A DNA stretch of 64,000 nt from Hyaloraphidium curvatum SAG 235-1 (GCA_025558095.1 JAIVFI010000024.1:558001-622000), one strand, 5' to 3'. Numbered from the stretch's first letter, positions 16,843 through 52,800 are shown. Program-made: numbers and translations. Notes: generated by a model from the sequence alone, not told the origin.

Positions 16843-17066
16843 GCGGGACGCAGAAGCGGCATGAAGTGCATGTAGACCATAGATTTTGATCTGGAAAGCA
16901 CGGCATGTTTTGCACTCTACCGTACCTGACGTCCCGGTTCTGTCGTGTCTCCTTCACGAGCCGGATGGGCAGCGAACCAAGCAGACTTCAGCTCCTTCAT
17001 GATGAATGACATTGTACCCCAGCTAAAGCATATCTATGTACATTTTCATTGCGGCGATCGTGACCA

Positions 17067-18548
17067 TCAGCTGTCCGCCGAGTCATCCTCGAAGCGCAGC
17101 ACCAGCGTCGGGAACCTCGGCTTGAGAAATGCAACTACGTATCCATGGTTCAGGAGAACAGTCTTGAGGCTCGGTAAGGCCCTCTCTGCCGCCTGTAGGA
17201 GCGATTCCACCTCCCCAATAGGCCAGGTACCGTCAATCGACACTCGCAGCGATCGAACGGCCGGGAACATGTACGGATCGCGCTGCGCAAAGAGATCACG
17301 GAACAATGCAAACCGAGTAGCAAGCGGCCACCAGTAGCTTTGCGCGATCTCGAGGTACGTAAGCTCCGGAAACCGGACGGGGTTCCGCCTCTTGATGTTG
17401 ACGCGTTGCAGCCGAAGCTCGGTCAGGGCGGCGCTGCAGCTCCCGAGGTCGTCAAAACACAGTTCAACGACGGAATTGTCGAGGCGCAGGGTGCGAAGGT
17501 TTGACATTGCCCGCAGATCCCCAACAATGCCTGCACCGTTCCCGGCACGCAGACGCAGGTGTTTGAGTTCCGGTTGGTGCTGCAGGAGCCGCTCTCCTGC
17601 ATTGAAAGAGTCGAAGCAATCAAAGTGGAGCAGCTCCAGCTCGGGCAGGGCACCGAAGAACTTCATCTACGATTGCTCGTTGGCGGTCGCCCCAACCAGC
17701 TTGCAAAGCCTCACGGACGCCGACTTCAAGCCGTTGAGGATCGAACGGGCCGAGAGCACCTGATCCACCACGATGTGGATTTGGTCCAATCGAAGTTCTT
17801 CCAGGTTGGGGCCCAGGTTCCCGAGCGAGGCCACGGGAAGCCGGACGTGCGATTCGCGCTGCCGCAGGTAATGTCGGCCCTGCCTTGCTGCGGAGAAGGA
17901 ACGGAGATCCTTGCCGGCAAGCATGCGGACAATCTCTGGGCAAGCGTTGCCCGATCCCGCTGCGAGAGTCAAGGAAAAGTCGCGCATTCTCATGAAGGGT
18001 AGAAGTAGACCGGCGATCCCATCCGCGCTGTCGACGTCAAAGAGCGAGATCCCGACGACCTGATCGAAGAGCTCCGGAGCTGACCCGAGCGCCGACGTCC
18101 AGAGCTGCACGCTTTTCCTGGCTCCGAGCGACATGCCGAGGGCCGACAGGCGCCCTCCGACCGAATTGCGCAGGACGTCCGAGAGCTCCGCGGGCCGCAC
18201 TTCCGCAGGAGACGCGAGCACTTCGAGGCTCCTAAGGAACTGCGCTTACGCCCGCGGACCCGCAGGGCCGGCCGTCCTCCGCCTCCGCCCGGGCAGCGCG
18301 GGGGCTTTTCCCACCGCGGCGTCATCGGCCGGCAACGGGCGGCGCAGCGCGTCCCACGCGCGCTTGGCCCATGCGGGCATGCGTTCGGCAATGACCAGGT
18401 GGTCCCAGACGATCGAGGCCGCGGGGATGTGGAGGGGCCGCACGCGAAGACACGCGAGCAGAGATGGGCGGTCGAGGTGGCGAACGATCTCGCGGAGGAT
18501 CTCGGGCGGCACCGAGTCGAGGCCGAAGGGTTGCGGTGCATCCGACAT
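17067..18548 (-). pseudogene. F-box/LRR-like gene with two in-frame stop codons
   Basis: F-box-like LDSVPPEILREIVRHL; LRR-like LxxLxL segments; one frame interrupted by TAA 18246-18248 and TAG 17667-17669. Confidence 0.7.
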
Positions 18549-42494: not shown

Positions 42495-43492
42495 CTAGGA
42501 ACCCCCCTGCTGCGCCGCCCTCGACAGCAGCAGCTCCGCCGCCGCATTCGGATCGTTCTCCGCCTCCCTCAGCGCAGCCACCGCCGCATCCCTCCCGAAC
42601 CCCATGGCCACCAGGAACCCGACCTGCTGCGGATCCGGCGGCGGCCTCGCGCTCGCCGGCTGCGCGGGGGGTTCCGCCGACGCGTGGCTCGGCGCCGTGC
42701 CGCGGGGCACGCGGGACGAGTCGAGGAGCGGGAGGAGGGAGGAGGAGGCCCAGGCGCGGAGGCGCGGGGGGAAGCGCCACTTCGTGACCGCCTCGGGGAG
42801 GAGGAACTTGTAGGCCAGCCCGGCGGCCAGCCCGCACGCCGAGGAATAGAGCGACGCGGGGTAGTTGGACAGCGCGAGCTGCACCCGATCTGCGGTCAGC
42901 CCCGTCGCGTCCCCTCGGTTCCAGGGCAAGAAACCCACCTGCACCCCGACCACGCACGGGAACCACTTATCCCCCACCCCGACCCCCCCTATCCTTACCC
43001 GATAAGTCGCCGGCACCTCGGCCAGGTAGAGCACCAGCGCCCCCAGCGCGACGCCGTACGGCCCCGGCGCCACCCCCGCCGCCGGCCGCGCGGCGAGCAG
43101 AAACGAGAGCTCCAGCGCGCAGGTGAGCGCCGTGACCACGGCCGCGAAGGCTGTTCCGCGACGGGCGGGAGGGATGCACGGTTGTCAGACGCGACCGGGA
43201 CGGCGGCCGGGGGAGACCCACAGCAGAACCGCGCCGAGCTGCCCGTCCTCTCCGCGACCCGCCCCTGGTTGTACACCAGCAGCCCGCCCCACAGCACCTC
43301 GGGCGCGCTGCGGAACGCGACCTGGCTCGTCACCAGCCGCCACAGCTGCAGGTCGCGGAGGAGGTGCGGCCACGCGGAGAGGTGCAGCAGGTGCCGCCCG
43401 CCGAACGCGCCCGCGGCGACGGAGGAGGTGACGCAGAGGAGGAGGAGGGATTTGACGGCGGGCGCGCCGGTGAAGCCCGCGGCGGCGGACAT
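42495..43492 (-). CDS. rhomboid-like pseudoprotease with C-terminal UBA domain (UBAC2/Dsc2-like)
   Basis: GFTGAPAVKSL, QLWRLVTSQVAF, VAERTGSSARF and GPYGVALG motifs; UBA QVGFLVAMGFGRDAAVAALREAENDPNAAAELL; two introns. Confidence 0.85.
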
Positions 43493-43606
43493 CGCGTCGC
43501 GTGGCAGCCAAGGGGAGAACAGGACTCGGAAAGGGATCCGTCACGCAGTGCTCGGTTCGATCAGCTCCATGCGCATCTGGGTTCCGATCCGGCGACAATG
43601 CACCCT

Positions 43607-45565
43607 CTAGCCGGTGTCCATCGCGTCCTCTCCGCCTTCCGCCGCCTCCACTTCCATCCCGGGCGCCTCCTCGGCCTCTGTCCGTCTCGGCCCGCCGTGG
43701 TCCGCCCGGTCCCGCCGCGGCTTGTCCTCCCCCTCGTCCTCGCTGTCGCTCAGGTACGTCCCCGCCTCCTCCGGCACGCGGTACCGGTCCGACATGTTCC
43801 CTGGAAAAGCGCGTTCCCGTCAGCCCGCGGGCACCCCGCGGACGCGGACGCGGGCCCCCACCCGTGATCCTCGCGTCCTTGTCCTCCTCCTCCTCCTCCT
43901 CCTCCCCCCGCAGCCCCGGCGCCACGCTCCGCGGCACCTCCCGCGCCTGCACCGACGGCCGGAACCCGGTGTTGCGCAGGTTCTCGAGCACCCGCACGCG
44001 GATCTTTTCCAGCTGCTCGGGCGTGTTGAGGTTGGGCATGTTGGAGGCGGGGACCGAGAGGGTGTAGTCGGGGCCGTAGTAGTCGTAGTAGTCGTTGTTG
44101 GGCAGCTCTGCAACGGGGCCGCGCCGTGAGCGGGAAGGCGCCGCAGCCGCGGGCCCGCGAAACCCACCCAACGGCAGAGTCTGCCCGACCAGCGCCGCCG
44201 TCTCGTAGGTCCACGCCCGCGCCACGTTCCGCATCGTGTACCCGCCCCCGCCCAGCACCAGCAGCGGCACGTTGAACGACTTCATGTACTCGACGCAGTG
44301 CGCGTGGCCTGTTCCCCCCGTCAGCACCATCCACCTTTCCTCGCCGCGGGAAGCAACGTACCCTGCATCGACAGGTTGAACACCCCCAGCCTGTCCCCCG
44401 CCAGCGAATCCGCCCCGCACTGCAGCACCACCGCCCCCGGGGCAAAGTACTCCATCACCTTGTCCATCACGGGCACGAACACCGCCTTGTAGCTCTCGTC
44501 GTCGATCCCGCTGTTGAGCGGCACGTTGACCGAGTAGTTGCGCCCGGGACCGGCGCCCGTGTCGGCGATGGAGCCGGTGCCGGGGAAGAACTCGCCGTAC
44601 TTGTGGAACGAGACGGTCATCACCCTGTCGGTGCAGTAGAACGCCTCCTCGACGCCGTCGCCGTGGTGCACGTCGATGTCGATGTACAGCACCCTCTGGT
44701 GCACCCGCAGCAGCTCGAGGATGGCCAGGACGATGTCGTTGACGTAGCAGAAGCCCGCGGCCTCGCCCTTGCGCGCGTGGTGCAGGCCGCCGGCCCAGTT
44801 GACGGCAACGTCGGCCTTGTCCTGGGTCAGGATCGAGGCGGCCGCTGGAACCCGGGGTTCAGCCGCGGAGAGCAGGCAGGGGAGGGGGAAGGGACCCACA
44901 CAGGGAGCCGCCGGCGGCGATGGCGGCAAAGTCGTACATGCCGTCGAACACGGGGCAGTCCTCCCCGACATTGACTGCCAGACGCCCGGATCAGAATCCC
45001 CGCTCGGGTCTGCCGGTTCGCCGGTCCGCGACCCACATTTGGACAGCGCGTTGGGGTACGAGTCCACGTTGTCGGGGTTGGCGAAGCGGAGAAAGTCGAT
45101 GTACTCGTCCGAGTGGAACCGCGTCATCTCCTCGTACGTGGCCGGCTTGGGCCTCTGTGTTTGGGAGTGGGTCAGCGCCTTTCACCGCGGCCGAAAGGGG
45201 GGCGGGACGGCCCAAGGGAGAGGGCGGGCCCGCCGAACGCGCGACGCGTCGGCCCGGGCCGTGTTCCCCCGGCCCCCCAGGCCCCTCCCCGCCCCCGCCG
45301 CGCCCCTTCCGCTCCCGCCGAGAAACCCACATAAACCGCCAGCTTCTTCCACAGCCCGTAGTTGAGCACCAGGTTGTGCGTCATCCGGATCCGGTGCGGT
45401 TTCATGGGGTGCTGCGCGCCGTAGTGGAAGTTGCCGACCTCGGCTGGCGGCGGCGCCCGAGGGCGTCAGGCGCGTCTGCCCGCGGCGGGAAGGGGGGCGC
45501 GACCCACGGTCGTAGAAGTAGGCCACCTTCCGCTTGGCGGCGGGGGAAACGAGCTCCGTGGGCAT
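43607..45565 (-). CDS. RPD3: class I histone deacetylase (Rpd3/HDAC1-2)
   Basis: [57 protein letters not shown] and GGGGYT motifs; multi-exon. Confidence 0.95.
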
Positions 45566-46054
45566 CGCGGCGGGTCGCCTCGGGGGGCAAATAGGGAATA
45601 GAGAGCCGGAGGGGTATAGGGAAGGGCCTGCTGCGACCCGGGCGGCCGAGGGCTTGGCAATGCCCTCGTCCGAGGAAGGACCAGCGGCGAGAGAGCGTGC
45701 GGGAAGGGATTGGACCATTCGAATCAGAGTCGTAGAAACCGGAACAGAGACAAAACTAGCTCCTCATTACAAGCGCAGAGATACAAAACCCCCTACCCCC
45801 ACATTGCGTGGAAGCCCGACGTGTGGGCTCGTGAGAGCGGAACCTGGGCCACTGCGGTCGATCGGATCCAGCTGCTAAAGACTGCTCGTACTGATTCGGA
45901 GCTCCGCGGGGGCCGATGGGAAGTACCTCGACCAGATGGTCTGTCAGGACGCGAGTTAACCATCTTCAGGATCGCTCTGGATCCAGTCAAGTGACCGATC
46001 GACGCCACAACAACAAGGTCGGGAGTCGCGAGCGCGGTCCCGCCGCCGTTCGCG

Positions 46055-47272
46055 ATGTGGCTGCGCCAAGCCGGGTTGTGGCACGTCTTCCTCGCGGCCT
46101 TGCTGGTCTGCGCCACGGCAGTGCTCCGGCGCTGCCCTGCGGCTCCGGGGTCCTCGCCTCTGGCCAGCCCTGCGGCAGATCCGGATCCGCCCGTGCCGCA
46201 CATCCACATCGGCGTCGTGGCCGCCGGCGCCAAGTACGCGGAGATGTTTGCCGCGGGAGTGCGGTCGGTGCTCTTCCACCGCCGCAGGAGGTCGCGGATC
46301 GAGTGGCACGTGTTCGCCGACCGATCCGCGGCCGCGTGGTTACGAGCGAACTTGACGCTGCTGGCCCCGGGCGCTCTGCCGCCCTGCGCCACAGTCTCCG
46401 TGCGCGACGTGGGGCCGCTGATCGCGCAGGCGCGCGCGTTCCTCGCGGAGAACAACCTCACGGTGCAGCATTACGTCGGCGTCCAGGGCCTGGCGCTCGC
46501 GTTTCTGCACGACCACGTGCCGCCGCATGTGGACCGCCTGGTGGTGCTCGGCACCGACATCTTCTACGTCGACGACGTGGCGCGGCACTGGGACCTCTTC
46601 GCCATGTTTGACCGCGGCACCACGCTGCGGGACCAGGAACCCCCCGACGGCCCGCTGGCCGAGTTCTTTTCCGAACCGCTGATGCCCGCCCCCGCGCCGC
46701 CGGCCAACCGCACGACGGTGCTCGCAGCGACGCGGTGGTACCCCCCTCTGCCCCGCACCTTCCGCTGGCGCGCAACCTGGCCCGACGCCGTCGTCATGGG
46801 CGGCCGCCTCGTGGACGTCGCCGGCGCGCGGCGGATCAATCTGACAGCGCGCTACGCCGCCGCCGCGTCCTTCTACCGCTCCCGCTTCGGCGTGGACAAG
46901 TTGACGGCCGCCGACCAGACCCTGGCCAACATGTTCGCGCTCACCCACCCGGACTACTTCTCCCTGCTCCCCTGCTGGACCAACGTGCACACCGTGCACG
47001 TGATGAGCAAGGGCGGCGTGCACTGGAACCGCACGGGGTGGTGCCGCGGCGAGGCGCCGGTCAACGTGCACGTGTCCCCCTCGCGGCAGGTCGCGGATCC
47101 CGATTCGAGGTACTCGGCCATGTTCAGGTGGTACGCGTCGCTAAGGGACGGCTGGCTGGCGTTCTGCCCGGGGGAGAGCGGCGCGGGGGACGGGCCGGCG
47201 AACGTGGACGAGTACTTTGCCGAGGGGGCGCGGATCTGGGGATCGTTCCGGGAGTACAACGGGCATGATTGA
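46055..47272 (+). CDS. GT8-family glycosyltransferase (GXYLT/LARGE xylosyltransferase-like), type II membrane protein
   Basis: N-terminal TM/signal anchor; IHIGVVAAG...RSVLFHR...WHVFAD, RLVVLGTDIFYVDDVARHWDLF, ADQTLAN and LLPCWTNV motifs; intronless. Confidence 0.75.
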   Translation: MWLRQAGLWHVFLAALLVCATAVLRRCPAAPGSSPLASPAADPDPPVPHIHIGVVAAGAKYAEMFAAGVRSVLFHRRRRSRIEWHVFADRSAAAWLRANLTLLAPGALPPCATVSVRDVGPLIAQARAFLAENNLTVQHYVGVQGLALAFLHDHVPPHVDRLVVLGTDIFYVDDVARHWDLFAMFDRGTTLRDQEPPDGPLAEFFSEPLMPAPAPPANRTTVLAATRWYPPLPRTFRWRATWPDAVVMGGRLVDVAGARRINLTARYAAAASFYRSRFGVDKLTAADQTLANMFALTHPDYFSLLPCWTNVHTVHVMSKGGVHWNRTGWCRGEAPVNVHVSPSRQVADPDSRYSAMFRWYASLRDGWLAFCPGESGAGDGPANVDEYFAEGARIWGSFREYNGHD

Positions 47273-47815
47273 GCGCGCAGCATATCTCTGGCCCTCCAGG
47301 TGCACGGTCACGGGCGGCAACAAGGAGGGGAGGTTTTGCCCTCGATCGGACGGGCAGCCCAGATGAACTGGTCGGGGGATCGGACGTGGGGCCGAAAACG
47401 GGATGGCGTCCAATCTGGGTAGTCAGGTCGTGTCGGCACGGTGCGACAGGGATCCATCTGATGCCGTCCTGGGTTACGGGAGCACGTCCACGGGCTCGGT
47501 ATGTGTTTTGTGGGTTGGGCCGGGGGAACGCAGCAGGGCAGGGCAGGGTGGCGGGGCTTGGAACGCACGGCGAGCTGCAGCAGTGAGATCCTTTCGATCG
47601 ATCACCTGCAATCTATGCGCGGGAGTTTCGCAGCCCCGAGGTGCAAGGAGGCGGGCGGCGGGTGGGGATCGCTGTGGGGCGGCTGGTATGCGGGAAAGAA
47701 TCGGCGGACCGGCCAGGGACCGGCCGCGGAAACAACTCGACAGAAAGGGCAGCCGGCGGCGCGTCAACTTACCAACAACTCGCGAAGTCCAGGGAAACGC
47801 GACGCCGCACGCTCC

Positions 47816-49540
47816 ATGCCGCCCGCGCGCCCCCCGCCCGCGGCCGCGGTGCGCGGCGTGCGGCCTCTCGCGCTCTCCGCGGTCTGCGGCGCAGCGGGCA
47901 CGCTCGCCTTCGCCGACTTTTCGTCGCTGCCGTTTTTCCCGAAGCGGCACTTTGTCGTCGCCGCGCCGCCCGCGGGCGCCCGCCGCGGCGGCCACGCGCA
48001 CCGGAGGACGAGCATGGTGCTGCAGTGCGTGGCGGGCTCCGTCGCCCTCCGCTTCGACGACGGCGTGGGCCGCGTCGAGATCGTGCTGGACGCGGCGCGG
48101 CCGCACGACGCCGTGCTCGTGGGCCCGCTGGTGTGGGGCACGCAGGACTACGGGCCCGGCGCGGTGTTGCTGGCCCTCTGCTCCGAGGAGCACGACGAGG
48201 CCGAGTACGTGCGGGACCGGGCCGAGTTCGAGGAGCTCGTCGGCGTGGCCGGCCGCGCGAAAGAGGCCGGGGAGGACTCGGGGTACGGGTCGGCCGAGTC
48301 GGACGTGAGCTCGGTGGAGGGCGTCCGGGAAACCGCCCCTGCGACCCCCGCGGCCCCCGCGCCGGAGCCGTCCTCGGCCCTGGTCCCTGCCGCCGCACCC
48401 CGCGAGCCGCGGATCCCCTTCTTGGACGCCAAAAAGGCCGCGCTGATGGTCGAACCCGCGCTCCTCGCCTCCTTCAGGCGCGTGCTCCATTCGGGACGCT
48501 ACGTGCTAGGCCCCGAGGTCGAGTCATTCGAGCGCGCGTGGGCGGAATACTGCGGCACGGTGCACTGTGTTGGCGTGGCGTCGGGGCTTGCCGCCTTGGC
48601 GCTGATGCTGGCCGCCCCGGGGATCGGAGAGGGCGACGAGGTGATCGTGGCGGCAAACACCTACATCGCGACGGTTTTGGCCGTCTCGCGGGTCGGCGCG
48701 ACCCCGGTGTTCGTGGAGCCGGATCCGGCGACGCGGAACTTGGACCCCGCCGCCGCCGAGCGCGCAATCACCCCGAAGACGCGCGCGATCCTCTCGGTCG
48801 ACCTGTACGGGCACCCCGCGCCCTACCCCGAGCTCGCCAGCCTGGCCGCCCGCCGCAACCTCCTCTTCTTTTCCGACGCCGCGCAATCCCACGGCGCCCG
48901 CGTCCGCGGCCGGCCGATCGCATCGTGGTGCCACGCCGCCGCCTTCTCCTTCTACCCATCCAAGAACCTCGGCGCCCTCGGCGAGGCCGGCGCCGTTGTG
49001 ACCTCGGACCCGCAGCTGGCGGAGAAGATAGCGGCGCTGCGGAACTACGGCTCCCGCTCGCGGTACGTGCACGATCTCGTCGGCTCGAACGAGCGGATGG
49101 ACCCCCTGCAGGCGGCGTTCCTTATGGACAAGCTTCCCCACCTGGACGCGCTCAACGCCCGGCGCAGGGAGGTCGCGCGCAAGTACCTCGACCTCCTCCG
49201 CGGCACCCCCGGCCTCGGGCTCCCCCCCGACCCCGGCCCCGGGGACGCCGAACCCTCGTGGCACCTCTTCGCTGCCACCCACCCCCGCCGGGACGCGCTG
49301 ATCGCCCACCTCGCGGGAAGGGGAATCGACGCCCTGGTGCACTACCCCGTGCCTCCCCACCTGTCGGGCGCCTACGCCGGGATGGGGCTCGGGAGGGGGG
49401 CGTTTCCGGCCGCGGAAAAGCTGGCGGACGAGGTGGTGAGCCTTCCGTGCTGCCCGTTCATGGACGACGGGATGGTGGGGAGGGTGGTCGAGGCGGTAAG
49501 GGAGTTTGCGGGCGGGGATCGCGGCGGGGAGGGGAGCTGA
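47816..49540 (+). CDS. FdtA/QdtA-like sugar 3,4-ketoisomerase (cupin) fused to a DegT/FdtB-type PLP sugar aminotransferase
   Basis: RRGGHAHR and AVLLALCSEEHDEAEYVRD (FdtA family); linker; GRYVLGPEVESFE, DAAQSHGA, SFYPSKNLGALGEAG (PLP Lys), LRNYG and NERMDPLQAA; intronless. Confidence 0.9.
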   Translation: MPPARPPPAAAVRGVRPLALSAVCGAAGTLAFADFSSLPFFPKRHFVVAAPPAGARRGGHAHRRTSMVLQCVAGSVALRFDDGVGRVEIVLDAARPHDAVLVGPLVWGTQDYGPGAVLLALCSEEHDEAEYVRDRAEFEELVGVAGRAKEAGEDSGYGSAESDVSSVEGVRETAPATPAAPAPEPSSALVPAAAPREPRIPFLDAKKAALMVEPALLASFRRVLHSGRYVLGPEVESFERAWAEYCGTVHCVGVASGLAALALMLAAPGIGEGDEVIVAANTYIATVLAVSRVGATPVFVEPDPATRNLDPAAAERAITPKTRAILSVDLYGHPAPYPELASLAARRNLLFFSDAAQSHGARVRGRPIASWCHAAAFSFYPSKNLGALGEAGAVVTSDPQLAEKIAALRNYGSRSRYVHDLVGSNERMDPLQAAFLMDKLPHLDALNARRREVARKYLDLLRGTPGLGLPPDPGPGDAEPSWHLFAATHPRRDALIAHLAGRGIDALVHYPVPPHLSGAYAGMGLGRGAFPAAEKLADEVVSLPCCPFMDDGMVGRVVEAVREFAGGDRGGEGS

Positions 49541-49880
49541 TCGGTCCTGGCGATGTAATATGGCTGTAGCTATGTGCTGGATGATGGATTCCCGGTGGGT
49601 GGACTAGAAGAATCTGATACCCCTGGCCTTGTCTCCCAAGAGCCCCGGCCCGACGGACGCCGTGGCACCAGCTCATCGGAGTCGACGCGGGGCGGAAGTG
49701 GGGCCAACCGGCCACACAGTCGCTTTTATGCGCCCGTAGGAAAGAGATTCTGAGACTCCCGCTTGCGGAGCGGCCAAAGGCCGGGGATCCGGTTCCGCGC
49801 CCCGTGCTCTGGAGAGTCCCAAAAGTGATCCCTAACGCTGCGCCCGGATCCCCCACAGGGACACAACCAACCCCGCGACG

Positions 49881-52800
49881 ATGGACGCGCCTTCCCGGTC
49901 GGAAGCGGGGGAGCCCGCGGAGGAGCCTTCCGACCGTGGCGATGAGGCGCCGGGGGTGCCCGATCCCGGCGTGCCCGCCCCGTCGGCCGCTCCCTCCTCC
50001 CCCGGTGGTTTCATCGCCTCGGCCGCCGCAGAGGCCAAGGAGAAGATCTCCACGCTGGGCCGCCGCGCCGCCGACTCGACCGTCAACAGGATTCCCGAAG
50101 CCCACCGTAAACGGCTGAAGGCCGTCGCGAACACGCTTGTCGCGGTCGCGCTGCTGGCGCCCGACGTGATCGCCGTCGCGGGCGTGCAGCCGCGCCTGCA
50201 GGACGGCGCGCCGCCCGATGCCGCGGCGAAGAAGCTCGCGGGGTCCGTGTTGGGCGTTGCGGCCAAGGCGGCCAAGGCAGCGGGCGGGGGGGACGGCAGG
50301 GCGGAGATGGTGGCCGGCGCGCTCGGGGCCGTGGCGGGGGTCGTCGGGGCGACGGCGGGCCAGGGCGGGACGGGACAGGGTCAGGGAGGGCCGGACATGG
50401 CGAAGCTGGGCACGCTCGTCGCGGGGACGCTGACGAGAGCCGTTGCCGGAGGCGGGGCGCCTTCGCTCGGAGGCCTGGCGTCGGCCGCGACGGGAATGCT
50501 CTCCGGGAACCCTGGCACGATGGATACCAAACAGAGTGGCGGCTCAGGGCTCGATCTTTCGGCCCTCACGGGGCTCGCTGCGGGAGCCGTGCCCCAGGGT
50601 GCGGGCGGTGTCGGACAGGCCTTGAACCTCGGCGGGCTGGCCTCGACTGCCACCGGCCCTTTCTCGGGCTCTTCGAGCTCTTCGCAACCGAAGCCGCTGG
50701 GGTTGGATCTCAATTCGCTCGCCGGACTCGCAGGAGGCTCCTTGCCTCGAACTTCGCCCGACGGCGTGCCTTCCTCCGCGGCGGGCGTGACGTCCCTGGC
50801 CGGCGGATTGCTTTCCGGCGCTTCGGGACCGTTGAGCCCGAAACTCCCTGGTGGCTCGGTGGACCTGGCGGGGCTGGCCGGCTTGGCTGCGGGGTCTTTG
50901 CCGCGATCGCCCGAAGGTGGCTCCCAGGCTTCCGTCGGCGGGCTGGCATCCATGGCAACCGGGCTCCTTTCCAAGGCCGCTGACGGGACGGGCATCGTTA
51001 CTTCCGGCGGGACTTTGGATCTGTCGAAGCTCGGAGGGCTCGCTTCCGGATCGTTGCCCCGAGGCACCCCGGATCCGAGCGATCCGGCGTTGCTGTCGCA
51101 GGGCACGGCGGTCGCGGCCCTGAACAACCTGTTTGGCGGCGGTTCGAGCAAGACGCAGGAATCGGGGGGGAAATCCGCGCCCGCAGCTGGGTCTCCGTTT
51201 GCGGGAGCGCAGGGTGCTTCCCCGTTGGATCTCTCTTCGCTCGCCTCGCTCGGTCGGGCTGCAACGTCTAAAGTGCCCCTTGCCGACAATCTCCTGGGCA
51301 ACGTCGCGACGGCAGTAGCTCCTGGGCAGATTCAAGTCTCGGATGGCTCGGGAGTCAAGGAGGCCGATCCAGCAATGGAAAACCTCGCAGCACCGCACAT
51401 GCTGGCGAGCGCCGCGATCGCAATCTCCCCCAACGCCGCGACCGTCGTGGACCTCCCTTCCCAGCCCCTGGATTCCGACTCGGAAACCTTGCGCAAATCG
51501 ACCTCGAGCTCGCATCCCAGCGAAAACCAGCTGGAGATTCCCCTCGTCGAGCTCCCCGACATGCCCAAGCGGGAGTTTTCCCGCGCCATCCGCCTCCTCG
51601 TGCTCGTGCTCGTCACCGCCGCCGGCTTCCTCGGCCCGATCGCCATGACGGCCTACTACCCCGGCCTGGAGCAGATCTCCTCGGACCTGCAGACCAGCCA
51701 GGAGGTGCTCGACCTGACCGTGACCGTCTTCACCCTCTCGTTGGCCGTGTTCCCGCTCCTGTGGGGCGTGCTCTCGGACTGGCTGGGCCGCAAGCCCATG
51801 TACCTCGCCTCCCTGGGCAGCTTCGCGGTCGGCTCGCTGCTGTGCGGGCTCAGCGTCAACATCGGAATGCTGGTGGCGTTCAGGGTGATGCAAGGGGCGG
51901 GGAGCGCGGCGATGCTGAGCATCGGGGCGGGGACGATCACGGACGTGTTTCCGCAGTCGCAGAGGGGGGCCGCGATGGCGCTGCTCAGCATTGGACGTGG
52001 GTTGCATGCATGCTCAATTTGTACGTGCTGACGTACCCGCTCCCGCAGCGCTGGTCGGACCGTCGATCGCCGGTCCCCTCGGGGGTGTGATGACCCAGTT
52101 CGCCGGCTGGCGCTCCGTCTTTTACCTCTCCGCCGGCCTTGGCTTCGCCATCCTCGCGGCCATCACCGCCTTCCTCCCCGAGACGGGCGTCCGGGGCCGG
52201 GGCTCGGCGCCCAACCCGCTCAAACCCCTCATCTATTTGAAGTATCCCTTCGTCGCCGTCGCGACACTGAACGTCGTGGTGGGGTACGGCATCTCCTTCG
52301 CCGTGCTGCCAGACATACCCTACCTCTTCACGTCGACCTACGACGATGTCCGGGACGGCCTGGTGCTGCTCGCCATGACCGGAGGCCAGCTCGTGGGCAG
52401 CCTGGTTTCGGGCTTCCTCTCGGACCGGATCCTGCGGATGGTCGCCAAGCGCGGAAGGGGGGCGATCGAGGACGCCCTCTGGCCGGCGCTGCCGTCGATC
52501 GTGCTGCTGCCGGGGATGCTGTCGGTTTTCGGGTGGAGCTTCACGCAGAAGTGGCATCCGTCGATCCCGATCATCAGCCTCATCATCATGGGATCCGCAA
52601 TGACGGCGATCGCGACGCCCTGCAACACCTACATCATCGACGTCATCTACTGGAGCCCGTGAGTGTCGAGTGCGGTGCCAGCGGGCTTGGAATCCTCACA
52701 TCCATCCGATCGCAGGGCCGCCGCCGTCGCGATCGGCAGCTCCTTCCGCTACGTCATCGGCGCCGCTTCCCCGCTGGCGACCCCTCCGCTCATCAGGAGC

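What the first reader, a model, noticed from the sequence alone, without database searches (positions are those of the whole stretch)
46055..49540. Candidate bacterial-type 3-amino-3,6-dideoxyhexose glycosylation module in a fungus (GT8 + FdtA-FdtB fusion)
Seen: two co-oriented, intronless genes about 540 bp apart: a secretory-pathway GT8 and an isomerase-aminotransferase fusion. They are flanked by intron-rich eukaryotic genes (RPD3, MFS), so this is not a bacterial contaminant contig. Known: FdtA/QdtA then FdtB/QdtB convert dTDP-4-keto-6-deoxyglucose to dTDP-Fuc3N/Qui3N for bacterial O-antigen and S-layer glycans; these sugars are not standard fungal glycan components. Inference: a horizontally acquired pathway making a rare amino sugar that the neighbouring GT adds to cell-wall or surface glycans. 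The upstream 4,6-dehydratase and any N-acyltransferase would be encoded elsewhere.
Basis: partly seen in the sequence, partly recalled or inferred. Interest (0 to 1): 0.85.

Follow-up and report, generated by a model that had tools for sequence, protein, structure and literature searches.

The report
Fungal rare amino-sugar gene module
An early-diverging fungus (Hyaloraphidium curvatum) carries expressed, intronless genes for making a bacterial-type 3-amino-3,6-dideoxy sugar, each sitting next to its own copy of a new LARGE-like glycosyltransferase, which suggests that this fungus puts a sugar so far known from bacterial surfaces onto its own glycans.

Summary
Window 46055-47272 (+) encodes a 405-aa type-II membrane protein. 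Pfam does not recognise it, but profile search, a language-model search and its predicted fold all place it with GT8 transferases of the LARGE1/XXYLT1 type.

543 bp downstream, 47816-49540 (+) encodes one polypeptide with two domains:
- An FdtA cupin 3,4-ketoisomerase with both catalytic histidines.
- A DegT aminotransferase closest to the C-3 enzymes DesV and QdtB.

RNA contigs show both genes transcribed and intronless, while the neighbouring RPD3 gene is spliced. The organism is the fungus Hyaloraphidium curvatum.

New findings:
- A second locus on contig C46 holds the only other GT8-like paralog, tail-to-tail with an FdtA-LbH N-acetyltransferase fusion. This is the predicted missing acyltransferase.
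- The same GT8-like/FdtA-LbH pair occurs in an unnamed eukaryote.
- Two RHM/R141-type 4,6-dehydratase genes exist and no RmlA, so the sugar is probably UDP-linked.
- The fusion belongs to a 24-member clade, on eukaryote-like contigs wherever context was checked. It nests among single-domain, bacterial-type aminotransferases and is separate from a giant-virus fusion clade.

The bacterial ancestry is therefore old, and the transferase is of eukaryotic stock. The sugar's identity, its stereochemistry and the transferase's donor remain untested.

The parts
46055..47272 (+). GT8-like glycosyltransferase gene (GT8L-1), 405 aa, intronless. It has an N-terminal signal anchor and a LARGE1/XXYLT1-like GT-A catalytic domain.
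   Evidence: ORF; identical public model P0121. No Pfam or NCBIfam hit. Profile search reaches GT8 proteins. Atlas neighbours are GXYLT at 0.97. AF2 pLDDT 79.9, and Foldseek gives LARGE1 at E 4e-19. Transcribed.
46058..46129 (+). Hydrophobic N-terminal helix (aa 2-25), read as a type-II signal anchor.
   Evidence: AF2 secondary structure shows helix H2-25. Sequence. The paralog and P0123 have equivalent hydrophobic N-termini. The topology is inferred.
46550..46558 (+). G166-T167-D168, at the position of the GT8 DxD metal motif (LARGE1 D242-T-D244). The first Asp is replaced by Gly.
   Evidence: Alignments. The paralog and P0123 have G-S-D; P0124 and P0125 keep D-T-D. D168 is invariant across 57 sequences.
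47273..47815 (+). 543-bp spacer between the two genes. It is covered by the same RNA contig.
   Evidence: A contig that spans two genes does not prove a single transcript.
47816..49540 (+). FdtA-DegT fusion gene, 574 aa from the Met at 47816 (the frame is open from 47501). Intronless.
   Evidence: The public model P0001 (364 aa) covers only the aminotransferase part. The RNA contig spans 45763-49510 without joints.
47882..48238 (+). FdtA/WxcM-type cupin domain, a sugar 3,4-ketoisomerase.
   Evidence: PF05523, E 1.6e-25. Best solved relatives: FdtD isomerase domain 4zu4/4mzu at E 2e-19, FdtA 2pa7 at 1.4e-14, QdtA at 1.5e-12.
47993..48001 (+). H60-A-H62 (RGGHAHRR), aligned to the catalytic His49/His51 of FdtA.
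   Evidence: HMMER alignment to 2pa7 (RGFHAHKK). Both His are invariant in 16 fusions.
48263..48400 (+). Low-complexity Ala/Pro/Ser/Glu linker between the two domains.
   Evidence: Alignment A4: this stretch varies in length and sequence among the fusions.
48464..49501 (+). DegT/DnrJ/EryC1 PLP-dependent sugar aminotransferase domain, of the C-3 type.
   Evidence: PF01041, E 6.7e-104. PDB best hits: DesV 2oga at 3.4e-116, QdtB 3frk at 4.4e-93, 7b0d (glutamine--scyllo-inositol transaminase) at 2e-84, then a putative aminotransferase (5u1z; WlaRG by my recollection) and WbpE.
48962..48964 (+). K383 in the FSFYPSKNLGA motif, the predicted PLP-binding lysine.
   Evidence: Invariant in alignment A4. 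The motif served as the family pattern. The role is assigned from knowledge of the DegT family.
45763..49510 (+). Extent of the single RNA-derived contig that covers both genes.
   Evidence: record 4: 3770 nt, 0 differences, 0 gaps. The adjacent MFS 5' region 49619-50200 has depth 0.
43185..45700 (-). Flanking RPD3-type histone deacetylase gene with spliced introns (44845-44899, 44975-45036, 45155-45330, 45444-45507).
   Evidence: ORF translations. RNA joints with CT..AC ends.

Best explanation
The window holds half of a two-locus system in Hyaloraphidium curvatum. The system most likely makes a nucleotide-activated 3-acetamido-3,6-dideoxyhexose (Qui3NAc or Fuc3NAc) and puts it on secretory-pathway glycans.

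Proposed route:
1. RHM/R141-type 4,6-dehydratases on contigs C1 and C21 give NDP-4-keto-6-deoxy-D-glucose. It is probably UDP-linked, because no RmlA exists.
2. The N-terminal FdtA cupin domain of the window's fusion moves the keto group from C-4 to C-3.
3. The fused DegT domain transaminates C-3 using PLP and glutamate. Fusion keeps the labile 3-keto intermediate close to the next active site.
4. The FdtA-LbH fusion on C46 N-acetylates the amine.
5. After import into the Golgi, the two GT8-like type-II membrane proteins, one beside each pathway gene, transfer a sugar with retention of configuration (alpha-linkage).

Shown here:
- Domain identities and conserved catalytic residues.
- Expression of the window pair.
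- The paired arrangement and its conservation in a second eukaryote.

Inferred:
- The nucleotide carrier and the gluco/galacto configuration.
- That the GT8-like proteins use this sugar as donor.
- That the G-x-D variant still binds metal.
For: Enzyme assignments:
- FdtA E 1.6e-25 and DegT E 6.7e-104 lie in one ORF.
- The His-x-His of FdtA is kept and the PLP lysine is invariant.
- The nearest solved aminotransferases are C-3 specific by my recollection: DesV, QdtB, WbpE and 5u1z (WlaRG, as I recall).

Companion locus:
- C46 encodes FdtA plus Hexapep/LbH.
- Its LbH part matches the N-acetyltransferase domain of FdtD at E 9.5e-46, then 7s3u, WlbB and QdtC.
- Members of the same clade fuse LbH-FdtA-DegT in one protein, which is a Rosetta-stone link between all three activities.

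Linkage:
- The genome has exactly two FdtA genes and two GT8-like genes, and each pair lies less than 0.6 kb apart.
- Nothing else is shared between the two loci.
- In an unnamed eukaryote, the GT8-like ortholog P0123 is convergent with an FdtA-LbH gene, 62 bp apart. This is the same layout as on C46, where the gap is 24 bp.

Precursor:
- Two intron-bearing dehydratase genes exist. One exon piece is closest to 6vlo (R141, a UDP-glucose 4,6-dehydratase) at E 2.7e-37 (PMC9614988).
- The best RmlA-like match scores only 39.6 bits against a cut-off of 360.

Expression: a single RNA contig at depth 95.6 covers both genes.

GT8L fold: LARGE1, XXYLT1 and LgtC are the best matches. The catalytic D-Q pair (D287-Q288), the second Asp (D168) and H339 are conserved.
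Against: - No chemistry has been done. The sugar has never been reported from this fungus or, as far as my searches went, from any fungus (searches returned nothing relevant, which is not proof of absence).
- GT8L lacks the first Asp of the DxD motif (G-T-D), so it could be inactive or metal-independent.
- Its closest characterised relatives are xylosyltransferases, so it may transfer xylose rather than the amino sugar.
- The FdtA domain of the C46 fusion has lost the second catalytic His (GGHAAR) and may be dead.
- Relatives of the fusion in other eukaryotes sit beside other transferases (GT17, GT61, GT47, GT1) and not GT8L.
- The gluco or galacto product cannot be read from sequence. The isomerase is nearest to FdtD/FdtA, while the aminotransferase is nearest to DesV/QdtB.
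- Expression of the C46 pair was not tested.
- No nucleotide-sugar transporter was identified.
Confidence: 0.62

Rival explanations
1. The sugar pathway is real, but the GT8-like proteins are ordinary alpha-xylosyltransferases or other UDP-sugar transferases. They either build the same glycan at a different step or are neighbours only by history. Another, unidentified transferase would add the amino sugar.
For: The nearest characterised relatives by sequence profile and fold are xylosyltransferases: the LARGE1 XylT domain, XXYLT1 and GXYLT. In other eukaryotes the fusion is flanked by GT17, GT61, GT47 or GT1 genes rather than GT8L. Close GT8L homologs are very few.
Against: Both GT8L genes are paired with both FdtA genes, and the pairing recurs in a second organism at only 33-37% GT8L identity. 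The G-x-D change is confined to the FdtA-linked branch. This hints at an altered donor site, but n = 3.
Confidence: 0.27
2. The amino sugar is not a cell-surface component. It is made for a glycosylated small molecule (as with mycaminose or desosamine in macrolides) or for a storage or secreted polymer, and the GT8L adjacency is incidental.
For: The best solved match of the aminotransferase is DesV, from the desosamine antibiotic pathway. FdtA-family isomerases also serve macrolide sugars (Tyl1a; my own knowledge).
Against: No PKS, NRPS or natural-product-type GT1 gene lies beside either locus. The linked transferases have signal anchors typical of Golgi enzymes. The N-acetyltransferase partner is of the O-antigen/S-layer FdtD/WlbB type.
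Confidence: 0.06
3. The genes are decaying relics, or pseudo-enzymes, of an old transfer and no longer form a working pathway.
For: GT8L lacks the first DxD Asp. The C46 FdtA domain lacks the second His and has a 2-aa deletion.
Against: The frames are intact, and the window pair is transcribed at a depth about a tenth of RPD3's. The two GT8L paralogs keep 59% identity with all other catalytic positions. The window's FdtA and DegT keep every catalytic residue that was checked.
Confidence: 0.04
4. The region is a bacterial contaminant, a recent bacterial transfer or an integrated giant-virus fragment.
For: The enzyme families are typically bacterial. Giant-virus MAG contigs also carry FdtA-DegT fusions.
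Against: The flanking genes are spliced eukaryotic genes on the same contig. GC content equals that of the flanks. The giant-virus fusions form a separate clade with 100% support, and the window protein sits in a 100%-supported clade whose members were on eukaryote-like contigs in every case checked.
Confidence: 0.01

Closest known systems
FdtA/FdtB/FdtC of Aneurinibacillus thermoaerophilus and QdtA/QdtB/QdtC of Thermoanaerobacterium thermosaccharolyticum (dTDP-Fuc3NAc and dTDP-Qui3NAc pathways for S-layer and O-antigen glycans)
   Same: The three activities and their order are the same: a cupin 3,4-ketoisomerase with the His-x-His pair, a PLP C-3 aminotransferase and an LbH N-acetyltransferase. 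Sequence matches are to 2pa7, 3frk and 3fs8.
   Different: The host is eukaryotic. Here the isomerase is fused to the aminotransferase, and a second isomerase-like domain is fused N-terminally to the acetyltransferase. The nucleotide is probably UDP, not dTDP. The genes are dispersed over two nuclear loci rather than arranged in an operon.
FdtD of Shewanella denitrificans / WxcM of Xanthomonas (bifunctional N-acetyltransferase plus 3,4-ketoisomerase)
   Same: This is the best solved match for both the FdtA domain (4zu4/4mzu, E 2e-19) and the LbH domain of the C46 protein (E 9.5e-46). It also combines these two activities in one chain.
   Different: The domain order is reversed: FdtD is LbH-FdtA, while the fungal protein is FdtA-LbH. 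The fungal FdtA domain of that protein has lost the second His.
LARGE1 xylosyltransferase domain, XXYLT1 and GXYLT1/2 (eukaryotic Golgi GT8 alpha-1,3-xylosyltransferases)
   Same: Shared features are the GT-A fold, a type-II membrane layout, the conserved second Asp, the D-Q catalytic pair and the C-terminal His. Profile E is 6.7e-70 to LARGE1 and Foldseek E is 4e-19.
   Different: It fails Pfam PF01501. The first DxD Asp is Gly. There is an extra 50-residue insert (aa 190-240, low pLDDT). It is genomically tied to amino-sugar synthesis genes. The donor is unknown.
Mimivirus R141-L136-L142 pathway (UDP-Glc to UDP-4-keto-6-deoxy-Glc to UDP-viosamine to UDP-Vio4NAc)
   Same: This is a precedent outside bacteria for a UDP-linked 6-deoxy amino sugar made by a dehydratase, a DegT aminotransferase and an acetyltransferase. 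The fungal dehydratase exon is closest to R141 (PMC9614988).
   Different: Amination there is at C-4 without a ketoisomerase. It is viral, not cellular. The giant-virus FdtA-DegT fusions found here form another clade.

Membership tests
FdtA/QdtA sugar 3,4-ketoisomerase (Pfam PF05523, cupin) | Match to the family model above the curated cut-off | tested here: met
   89.8 bits against a cut-off of 23, E 1.6e-25, covering profile positions 11-129 of 131.
FdtA/QdtA sugar 3,4-ketoisomerase (Pfam PF05523, cupin) | Catalytic His-x-His pair (FdtA His49/His51) | tested here: met
   RGGHAHRR aligns to RGFHAHKK of 2pa7. Both His are invariant in 16 fusions. The C46 paralogous domain has GGHAAR, so it does not meet this feature.
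FdtA/QdtA sugar 3,4-ketoisomerase (Pfam PF05523, cupin) | Conversion of NDP-4-keto-6-deoxyglucose to the 3-keto sugar, and the gluco or galacto product | not testable with these tools
   This needs an enzyme assay with NMR of the product.
DegT/DnrJ/EryC1 sugar aminotransferase, C-3 class (QdtB/FdtB/DesV) | Family model match and PLP-lysine motif | tested here: met
   PF01041 at 348 bits. K383 in FSFYPSKNLGA is invariant.
DegT/DnrJ/EryC1 sugar aminotransferase, C-3 class (QdtB/FdtB/DesV) | Closest characterised relatives act at C-3 rather than C-4 | tested here: met
   Best matches: DesV at 3.4e-116, QdtB at 4.4e-93, 5u1z (WlaRG by my recollection) at 2.6e-80, WbpE at 1e-67. The C-4 enzymes (ArnB, perosamine synthase, WecE-type) score E 1e-50 or worse. 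No NCBIfam equivalog cut-off is reached.
Glycosyltransferase family 8 (Pfam PF01501; LARGE/XXYLT/LgtC/glycogenin) | Match to the Pfam GT8 model | tested here: not met
   No hit, even at E <= 10.
Glycosyltransferase family 8 (Pfam PF01501; LARGE/XXYLT/LgtC/glycogenin) | Remote homology and GT-A fold of GT8 type | tested here: met
   A profile of the two paralogs reaches GT8 proteins: 44 of 57 aligned sequences carry PF01501. Foldseek gives LARGE1 at E 4e-19, XXYLT1 at 9e-16 and LgtC at 3e-10.
Glycosyltransferase family 8 (Pfam PF01501; LARGE/XXYLT/LgtC/glycogenin) | DxD metal-binding motif | tested here: not met
   G166-T-D168 lies where LARGE1 has D242-T-D244. The same Gly is found in the paralog and in P0123, while P0124 and P0125 keep DTD.
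Glycosyltransferase family 8 (Pfam PF01501; LARGE/XXYLT/LgtC/glycogenin) | Catalytic D-Q pair (LgtC D188/Q189) and C-terminal metal His | tested here: met
   D287-Q288 are invariant in A3. H339 aligns with the His of the LARGE1 'IHW' segment.
FdtC/QdtC/FdtD-type 3-amino-sugar N-acetyltransferase (LbH), for the C46 partner | Hexapeptide LbH domain most similar to sugar 3-N-acetyltransferases | tested here: met
   PF00132 at E 1.5e-19. FdtD N-domain at E 9.5e-46, 7s3u at 2e-34, WlbB at 7e-30, QdtC at 1e-17. It is below the NeuD/PglB/VioB subfamily cut-off (94 against 161 bits).
NDP-glucose 4,6-dehydratase (RmlB/RHM/R141), for the C1 and C21 genes | Family match | tested here: inconclusive
   Exon-wise TIGR01181 matches score 138+95 and 137+98 bits, and no single exon reaches the whole-protein cut-off of 365. 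One exon is closest to R141 (6vlo) at E 2.7e-37.

The most novel reading that the evidence does not exclude
A lineage of zoosporic fungi, and a wider set of still unnamed microbial eukaryotes, decorates its surface glycans with a 3-acetamido-3,6-dideoxyhexose made from UDP-glucose. The pathway enzyme is an anciently acquired, eukaryote-specific FdtA-FdtB fusion. The sugar is installed by a previously unrecognised G-x-D branch of LARGE-like GT8 enzymes that was recruited from the eukaryotic xylosyltransferase stock. That would be a new eukaryotic glycosylation system and a new GT8 donor specificity.
Probability: 0.35. Interest if true: 0.8.

Novelty: new variant of a known kind. Interest (0 to 1): 0.62.

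Why it matters
3-Amino-3,6-dideoxyhexoses are treated as hallmarks of bacterial O-antigens, S-layers and antibiotics. If the module works as proposed, several things follow:
- It would add a sugar class to fungal and eukaryotic glycobiology.
- It would show a chimeric origin: bacterial-type sugar synthesis joined to a eukaryotic LARGE-like transferase.
- It would give a tractable enzyme pair for making UDP-linked rare amino sugars.
- It would supply a natural GT8 with an altered metal motif for mechanistic study.

The finding also flags H. curvatum as unusually rich in bacterial-type deoxy- and amino-sugar genes, with eight DegT genes, many of them in long open frames with a second domain. It reveals a clade of FdtA-FdtB fusions in uncultured eukaryotes and a separate clade in giant viruses. 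My paper searches found no description of either clade, and the 2022 giant-virus glycan review does not mention ketoisomerases, Qui3N or Fuc3N.

Tried and rejected
- Pfam and NCBIfam on ORF1 gave nothing.
- The word-indexed homology search for ORF1 found only its own paralog.
- AF2 with the two-sequence alignment failed at pLDDT 37. It was repeated with 57 sequences and reached pLDDT 79.9.
- The dTDP route was rejected for lack of RmlA: best 39.6 bits against a cut-off of 360.
- Giant-virus origin was rejected because the viral fusions form a separate, fully supported clade. Most 'viral' hits turned out to be adjacent but separate fdtA and degT ORFs on phage- or bacteria-like contigs.
- A segmental duplication linking the C24 and C46 loci was rejected. 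Only the GT8L and FdtA parts are shared.
- The other seven DegT genes of the genome are not recent paralogs. Six are only 27-38% identical in the DegT domain, and the seventh gave no BLAST match.
- Cluster look-up gave no organism names for the fused relatives.
- A housekeeping-like gene from the SRR26194948 contig only weakly points to H. curvatum as its nearest named relative, at 40% identity.
- Literature searches for FdtA-type genes or these sugars in fungi or eukaryotes found nothing relevant. One search was badly phrased and useless.
- The prokaryotic promoter and terminator scan was uninformative.
- The RNA contig ends at 49510 with 22 unmatched letters. No splice signal explains this, so the last ten or so codons are unconfirmed.

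Full report
**What is in the sequence**

Two co-oriented open frames lie at 46055-47272 (405 aa) and 47501-49540. The second frame carries an FdtA/WxcM cupin domain (PF05523, E 1.6e-25) and a DegT/DnrJ/EryC1 aminotransferase domain (PF01041, E 6.7e-104), with no stop between them. Similarity to fused relatives starts just after the Met at 47816.

The public gene model for this locus (P0001, 364 aa) covers only the aminotransferase, so the fusion is not in the existing annotation. GC content (0.70-0.72) is the same as in the flanks.

**Organism and authenticity**

The paralog of ORF1 on another contig of the same assembly is named by NCBI as a hypothetical protein of Hyaloraphidium curvatum. 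This species is a monoblepharomycote fungus. The assembly is 31.9 Mb in 55 contigs.

The one public run that holds the stretch proved to be RNA. The neighbouring RPD3 gene is spliced at four introns with GT..AG ends on the minus strand. One 3770-nt contig covers 45763-49510 with no differences and no joints, while the next gene's 5' region has depth 0.

**The fusion protein**

- The FdtA domain aligns RGGHAHRR to RGFHAHKK of FdtA, so His49 and His51 are kept. It is closest to the isomerase domain of FdtD (E 2e-19), then FdtA, then QdtA.
- The aminotransferase domain is closest to DesV (E 3.4e-116) and QdtB (4.4e-93), then 7b0d, 5u1z and WbpE. By my recollection DesV, QdtB, 5u1z (WlaRG) and WbpE are all C-3 aminotransferases. 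The C-4 enzymes score far worse.
- The PLP lysine motif is invariant.

The gluco or galacto outcome cannot be decided from sequence.

**The neighbouring transferase**

Pfam and NCBIfam see nothing in ORF1, and a word-based search of 5.8 billion proteins found only its paralog. Other methods recover a GT8 identity:

- An exhaustive profile search with the two paralogs found three close relatives (P0123-P0125) and about fifty weak ones.
- 44 of the 57 aligned sequences are Pfam GT8, and 10 also carry GT49 as in LARGE.
- The language-model neighbours are GXYLT clusters.
- The AF2 model built with the deeper alignment (pLDDT 79.9) matches LARGE1, XXYLT1, LgtC and glycogenin.
- A family profile aligns along the whole LARGE1 xylosyltransferase domain. 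That E-value is inflated, because the profile contains LARGE-like rows.

The protein has an N-terminal hydrophobic helix and several N-glycosylation sequons, as expected of a Golgi type-II enzyme. It keeps the second Asp of the DxD motif, the D-Q catalytic pair and the C-terminal His. The first Asp is Gly (G-T-D), and the same is true of the paralog and of P0123. P0124 and P0125 keep D-T-D. It is therefore GT8-like by descent and fold, but it fails two formal GT8 criteria.

**The second locus**

A search of the whole assembly for FdtA found one further gene, on contig C46. It encodes an FdtA-like domain fused N-terminally to a hexapeptide LbH acetyltransferase. The LbH part matches the N-acetyltransferase domain of FdtD (E 9.5e-46), then 7s3u, WlbB and QdtC.

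Twenty-four bp from its 3' end, convergent with it, lies the only other GT8-like gene of the genome, 59% identical to ORF1. The genome's two GT8-like genes thus sit beside its two FdtA genes. The loci share nothing else, so this is not a segmental duplication. For two genes in 32 Mb, I estimate that chance adjacency of both pairs is of the order of 1e-8.

The C46 FdtA domain has lost the second His (GGHAAR). Its ortholog in another organism keeps it.

**Conservation elsewhere**

The closest GT8-like relative, P0123, scores E 1.7e-56 to the profile and is 33-37% identical. It lies on a 27-kb contig from SRR26194948 with zf-MYND, Fringe, fasciclin and trypsin genes. It is convergent with an FdtA-Hexapep fusion 62 bp away, which is the C46 arrangement. 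That fusion is 51% identical to the fungal one.

The same sample holds two FdtA-DegT fusions, 52-53% identical to the window protein. They lie on contigs with UBA, RING, GT17, GT61 and GT47 genes. A 2-hydroxyacid oxidase (FMN_dh family) gene on the P0123 contig has H. curvatum as its best named hit, at only 40% identity. The organism is therefore at best a distant relative.

In a small tree the two fungal GT8-like genes are sisters (support 98/99), then comes P0123, then the D-T-D forms. The GT8-like gene thus duplicated within the Hyaloraphidium lineage, yet each copy sits by a pathway gene.

**Origin of the fusion**

In a tree of DegT domains, 24 of 26 fusions plus the window protein form one clade (SH-aLRT 99-100). 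This clade is nested among single-domain proteins. The few of those that carry names are bacterial (Acidobacteriota, Rubrivirga, Thermoanaerobaculia).

Every clade member whose context I read lies on eukaryote-like DNA:
- P0006: Exo70, longin, PEX11 and cyclin genes.
- P0008: PIF1, kinase and hAT genes.
- P0037: a TPT-family transporter gene, plus GT1 and DUF5672 genes.

Several members are triple fusions, LbH-FdtA-DegT, which ties the acetyltransferase to the pathway.

A scan of viral contigs found seven true FdtA-DegT fusions in giant-virus MAG contigs, but these form their own clade. It also found phage- or bacteria-like contigs where fdtA and degT are adjacent ORFs with overlapping stop and start. 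That is an obvious precursor state for a fusion.

The bacterial ancestry is therefore supported, but the event is old and is shared by a group of eukaryotes. The fusion has arisen at least three times.

**Precursor supply**

No RmlA exists: the best match is 39.6 bits against a cut-off of 360. Two near-duplicate, intron-bearing genes on C1 and C21 match NDP-glucose 4,6-dehydratase exon by exon.

I searched one exon by reference only. It is closest to 6vlo (E 2.7e-37). That entry is Mimivirus R141, a UDP-glucose 4,6-dehydratase that accepts UDP- or dTDP-glucose (PMC9614988). A UDP-linked pathway is the likely but unproven reading.

**Mechanism proposed**

1. UDP-Glc is converted to UDP-4-keto-6-deoxy-Glc by the C1 and C21 dehydratases.
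2. The FdtA domain converts this to the 3-keto sugar.
3. The DegT domain, with PLP and glutamate, gives the 3-amino-3,6-dideoxyhexose.
4. The C46 FdtA-LbH protein N-acetylates it.
5. The sugar is imported into the Golgi and transferred by the GT8-like enzymes with retention of configuration.

Domain identity, catalytic residues, expression of the window pair and conserved linkage are shown. The nucleotide, the stereochemistry, the donor use by GT8L and the acceptor are inferred. The main rival is that GT8L is a xylosyltransferase working on the same glycan or unrelated to it.

**Novelty and score**

The enzymes belong to known families. What is new:
- The fungal host.
- The eukaryote-specific fusion clade.
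- The reversed FdtA-LbH architecture.
- A G-x-D branch of LARGE-like GT8 tied to amino-sugar genes.

My literature searches found no prior description, which is not proof of absence. I rate it a new variant of a known kind, interest 0.62.

**Earlier notes of this scan**

Two earlier notes on the same stretch (the fusion itself, and GTD in place of DTD) agree with what I found and were tested here. The scan had not noted this on other DNA.

Noticed in passing
G000 contigs C4:312183-313157, C37:182668-183732, C39:299371-300330, C21:392039-393121, C5:903061-905274, C29:586661-587761, C20:342878-343912 (loci L015-L021): The genome holds seven more DegT-family genes, most in long open frames with a second domain. 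Two GNAT-DegT fusions pass NCBIfam's cut-off for the WecE-type dTDP-4-amino-4,6-dideoxygalactose transaminase. Two are RfbH-like 3-dehydrase relatives, one of them fused to an SDR/GDP-fucose-synthase-like domain. Two are PseC/LegC-like, and one is a NeuD-like LbH-DegT fusion. This is a very large bacterial-type deoxy- and amino-sugar toolkit for a fungus.
   Followed up: partly
L036:1728-3320, L079:4093-5592, L083:2721-4220, L100:5929-7458, L101 and L102:5920-7425, L104:1894-3474: IMG/VR contigs, four of them named giant-virus MAGs, carry their own FdtA-DegT fusions, 26-39% identical in the DegT part. They form a clade separate from the eukaryotic one. The 2022 review of giant-virus glycans does not mention ketoisomerases, Qui3N or Fuc3N.
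   Followed up: partly
L027:10001-12073 and L028:186-2258 (P0008); also P0007, P0011, P0013, P0015, P0017, P0019-P0022: Triple fusions LbH-FdtA-DegT place the acetyltransferase, the isomerase and the aminotransferase in one chain. For P0008 they lie on eukaryote-like metagenome contigs with PIF1, kinase and hAT genes.
   Followed up: partly
L004:3651-7160, L005:11707-14040 and 16928-17506, L024:11198-13642: In the SRR26194948 organism the FdtA genes are flanked by other Golgi-type glycan genes: a GT61-like gene, a Methyltransf_24-like gene, a 777-aa GT17 protein, GT47 exostosin and an 814-aa Fringe-domain protein. This looks like loose glycan gene clustering in a eukaryote.
   Followed up: no
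G000:C1:1122886-1124700 (L006) and G000:C21:552595-554400 (L007); also C33:155056-155954 and C53:987-1885: The 4,6-dehydratase gene is present as two near-identical intron-bearing copies on different contigs. Another SDR gene gives identical scores on C33 and on the short contig C53, which suggests recent duplication or uncollapsed haplotypes in the assembly.
   Followed up: no
window 49510-49540: The RNA contig stops at 49510 and continues with 22 letters that do not match the genome. This is 30 bp before the stop codon and lies in a G-rich stretch. A GTAAG-like string sits at 49497. The extreme C-terminus of the fusion is therefore unconfirmed.
   Followed up: partly
Its 5' part had zero RNA depth in the one run available.
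   Followed up: no
L025:14-1075 (P0124) and P0125: The only GT8-like relatives that keep the canonical D-T-D motif come from AT-rich (32% GC), very short contigs of unknown origin. Their genomic context could not be read.
   Followed up: no
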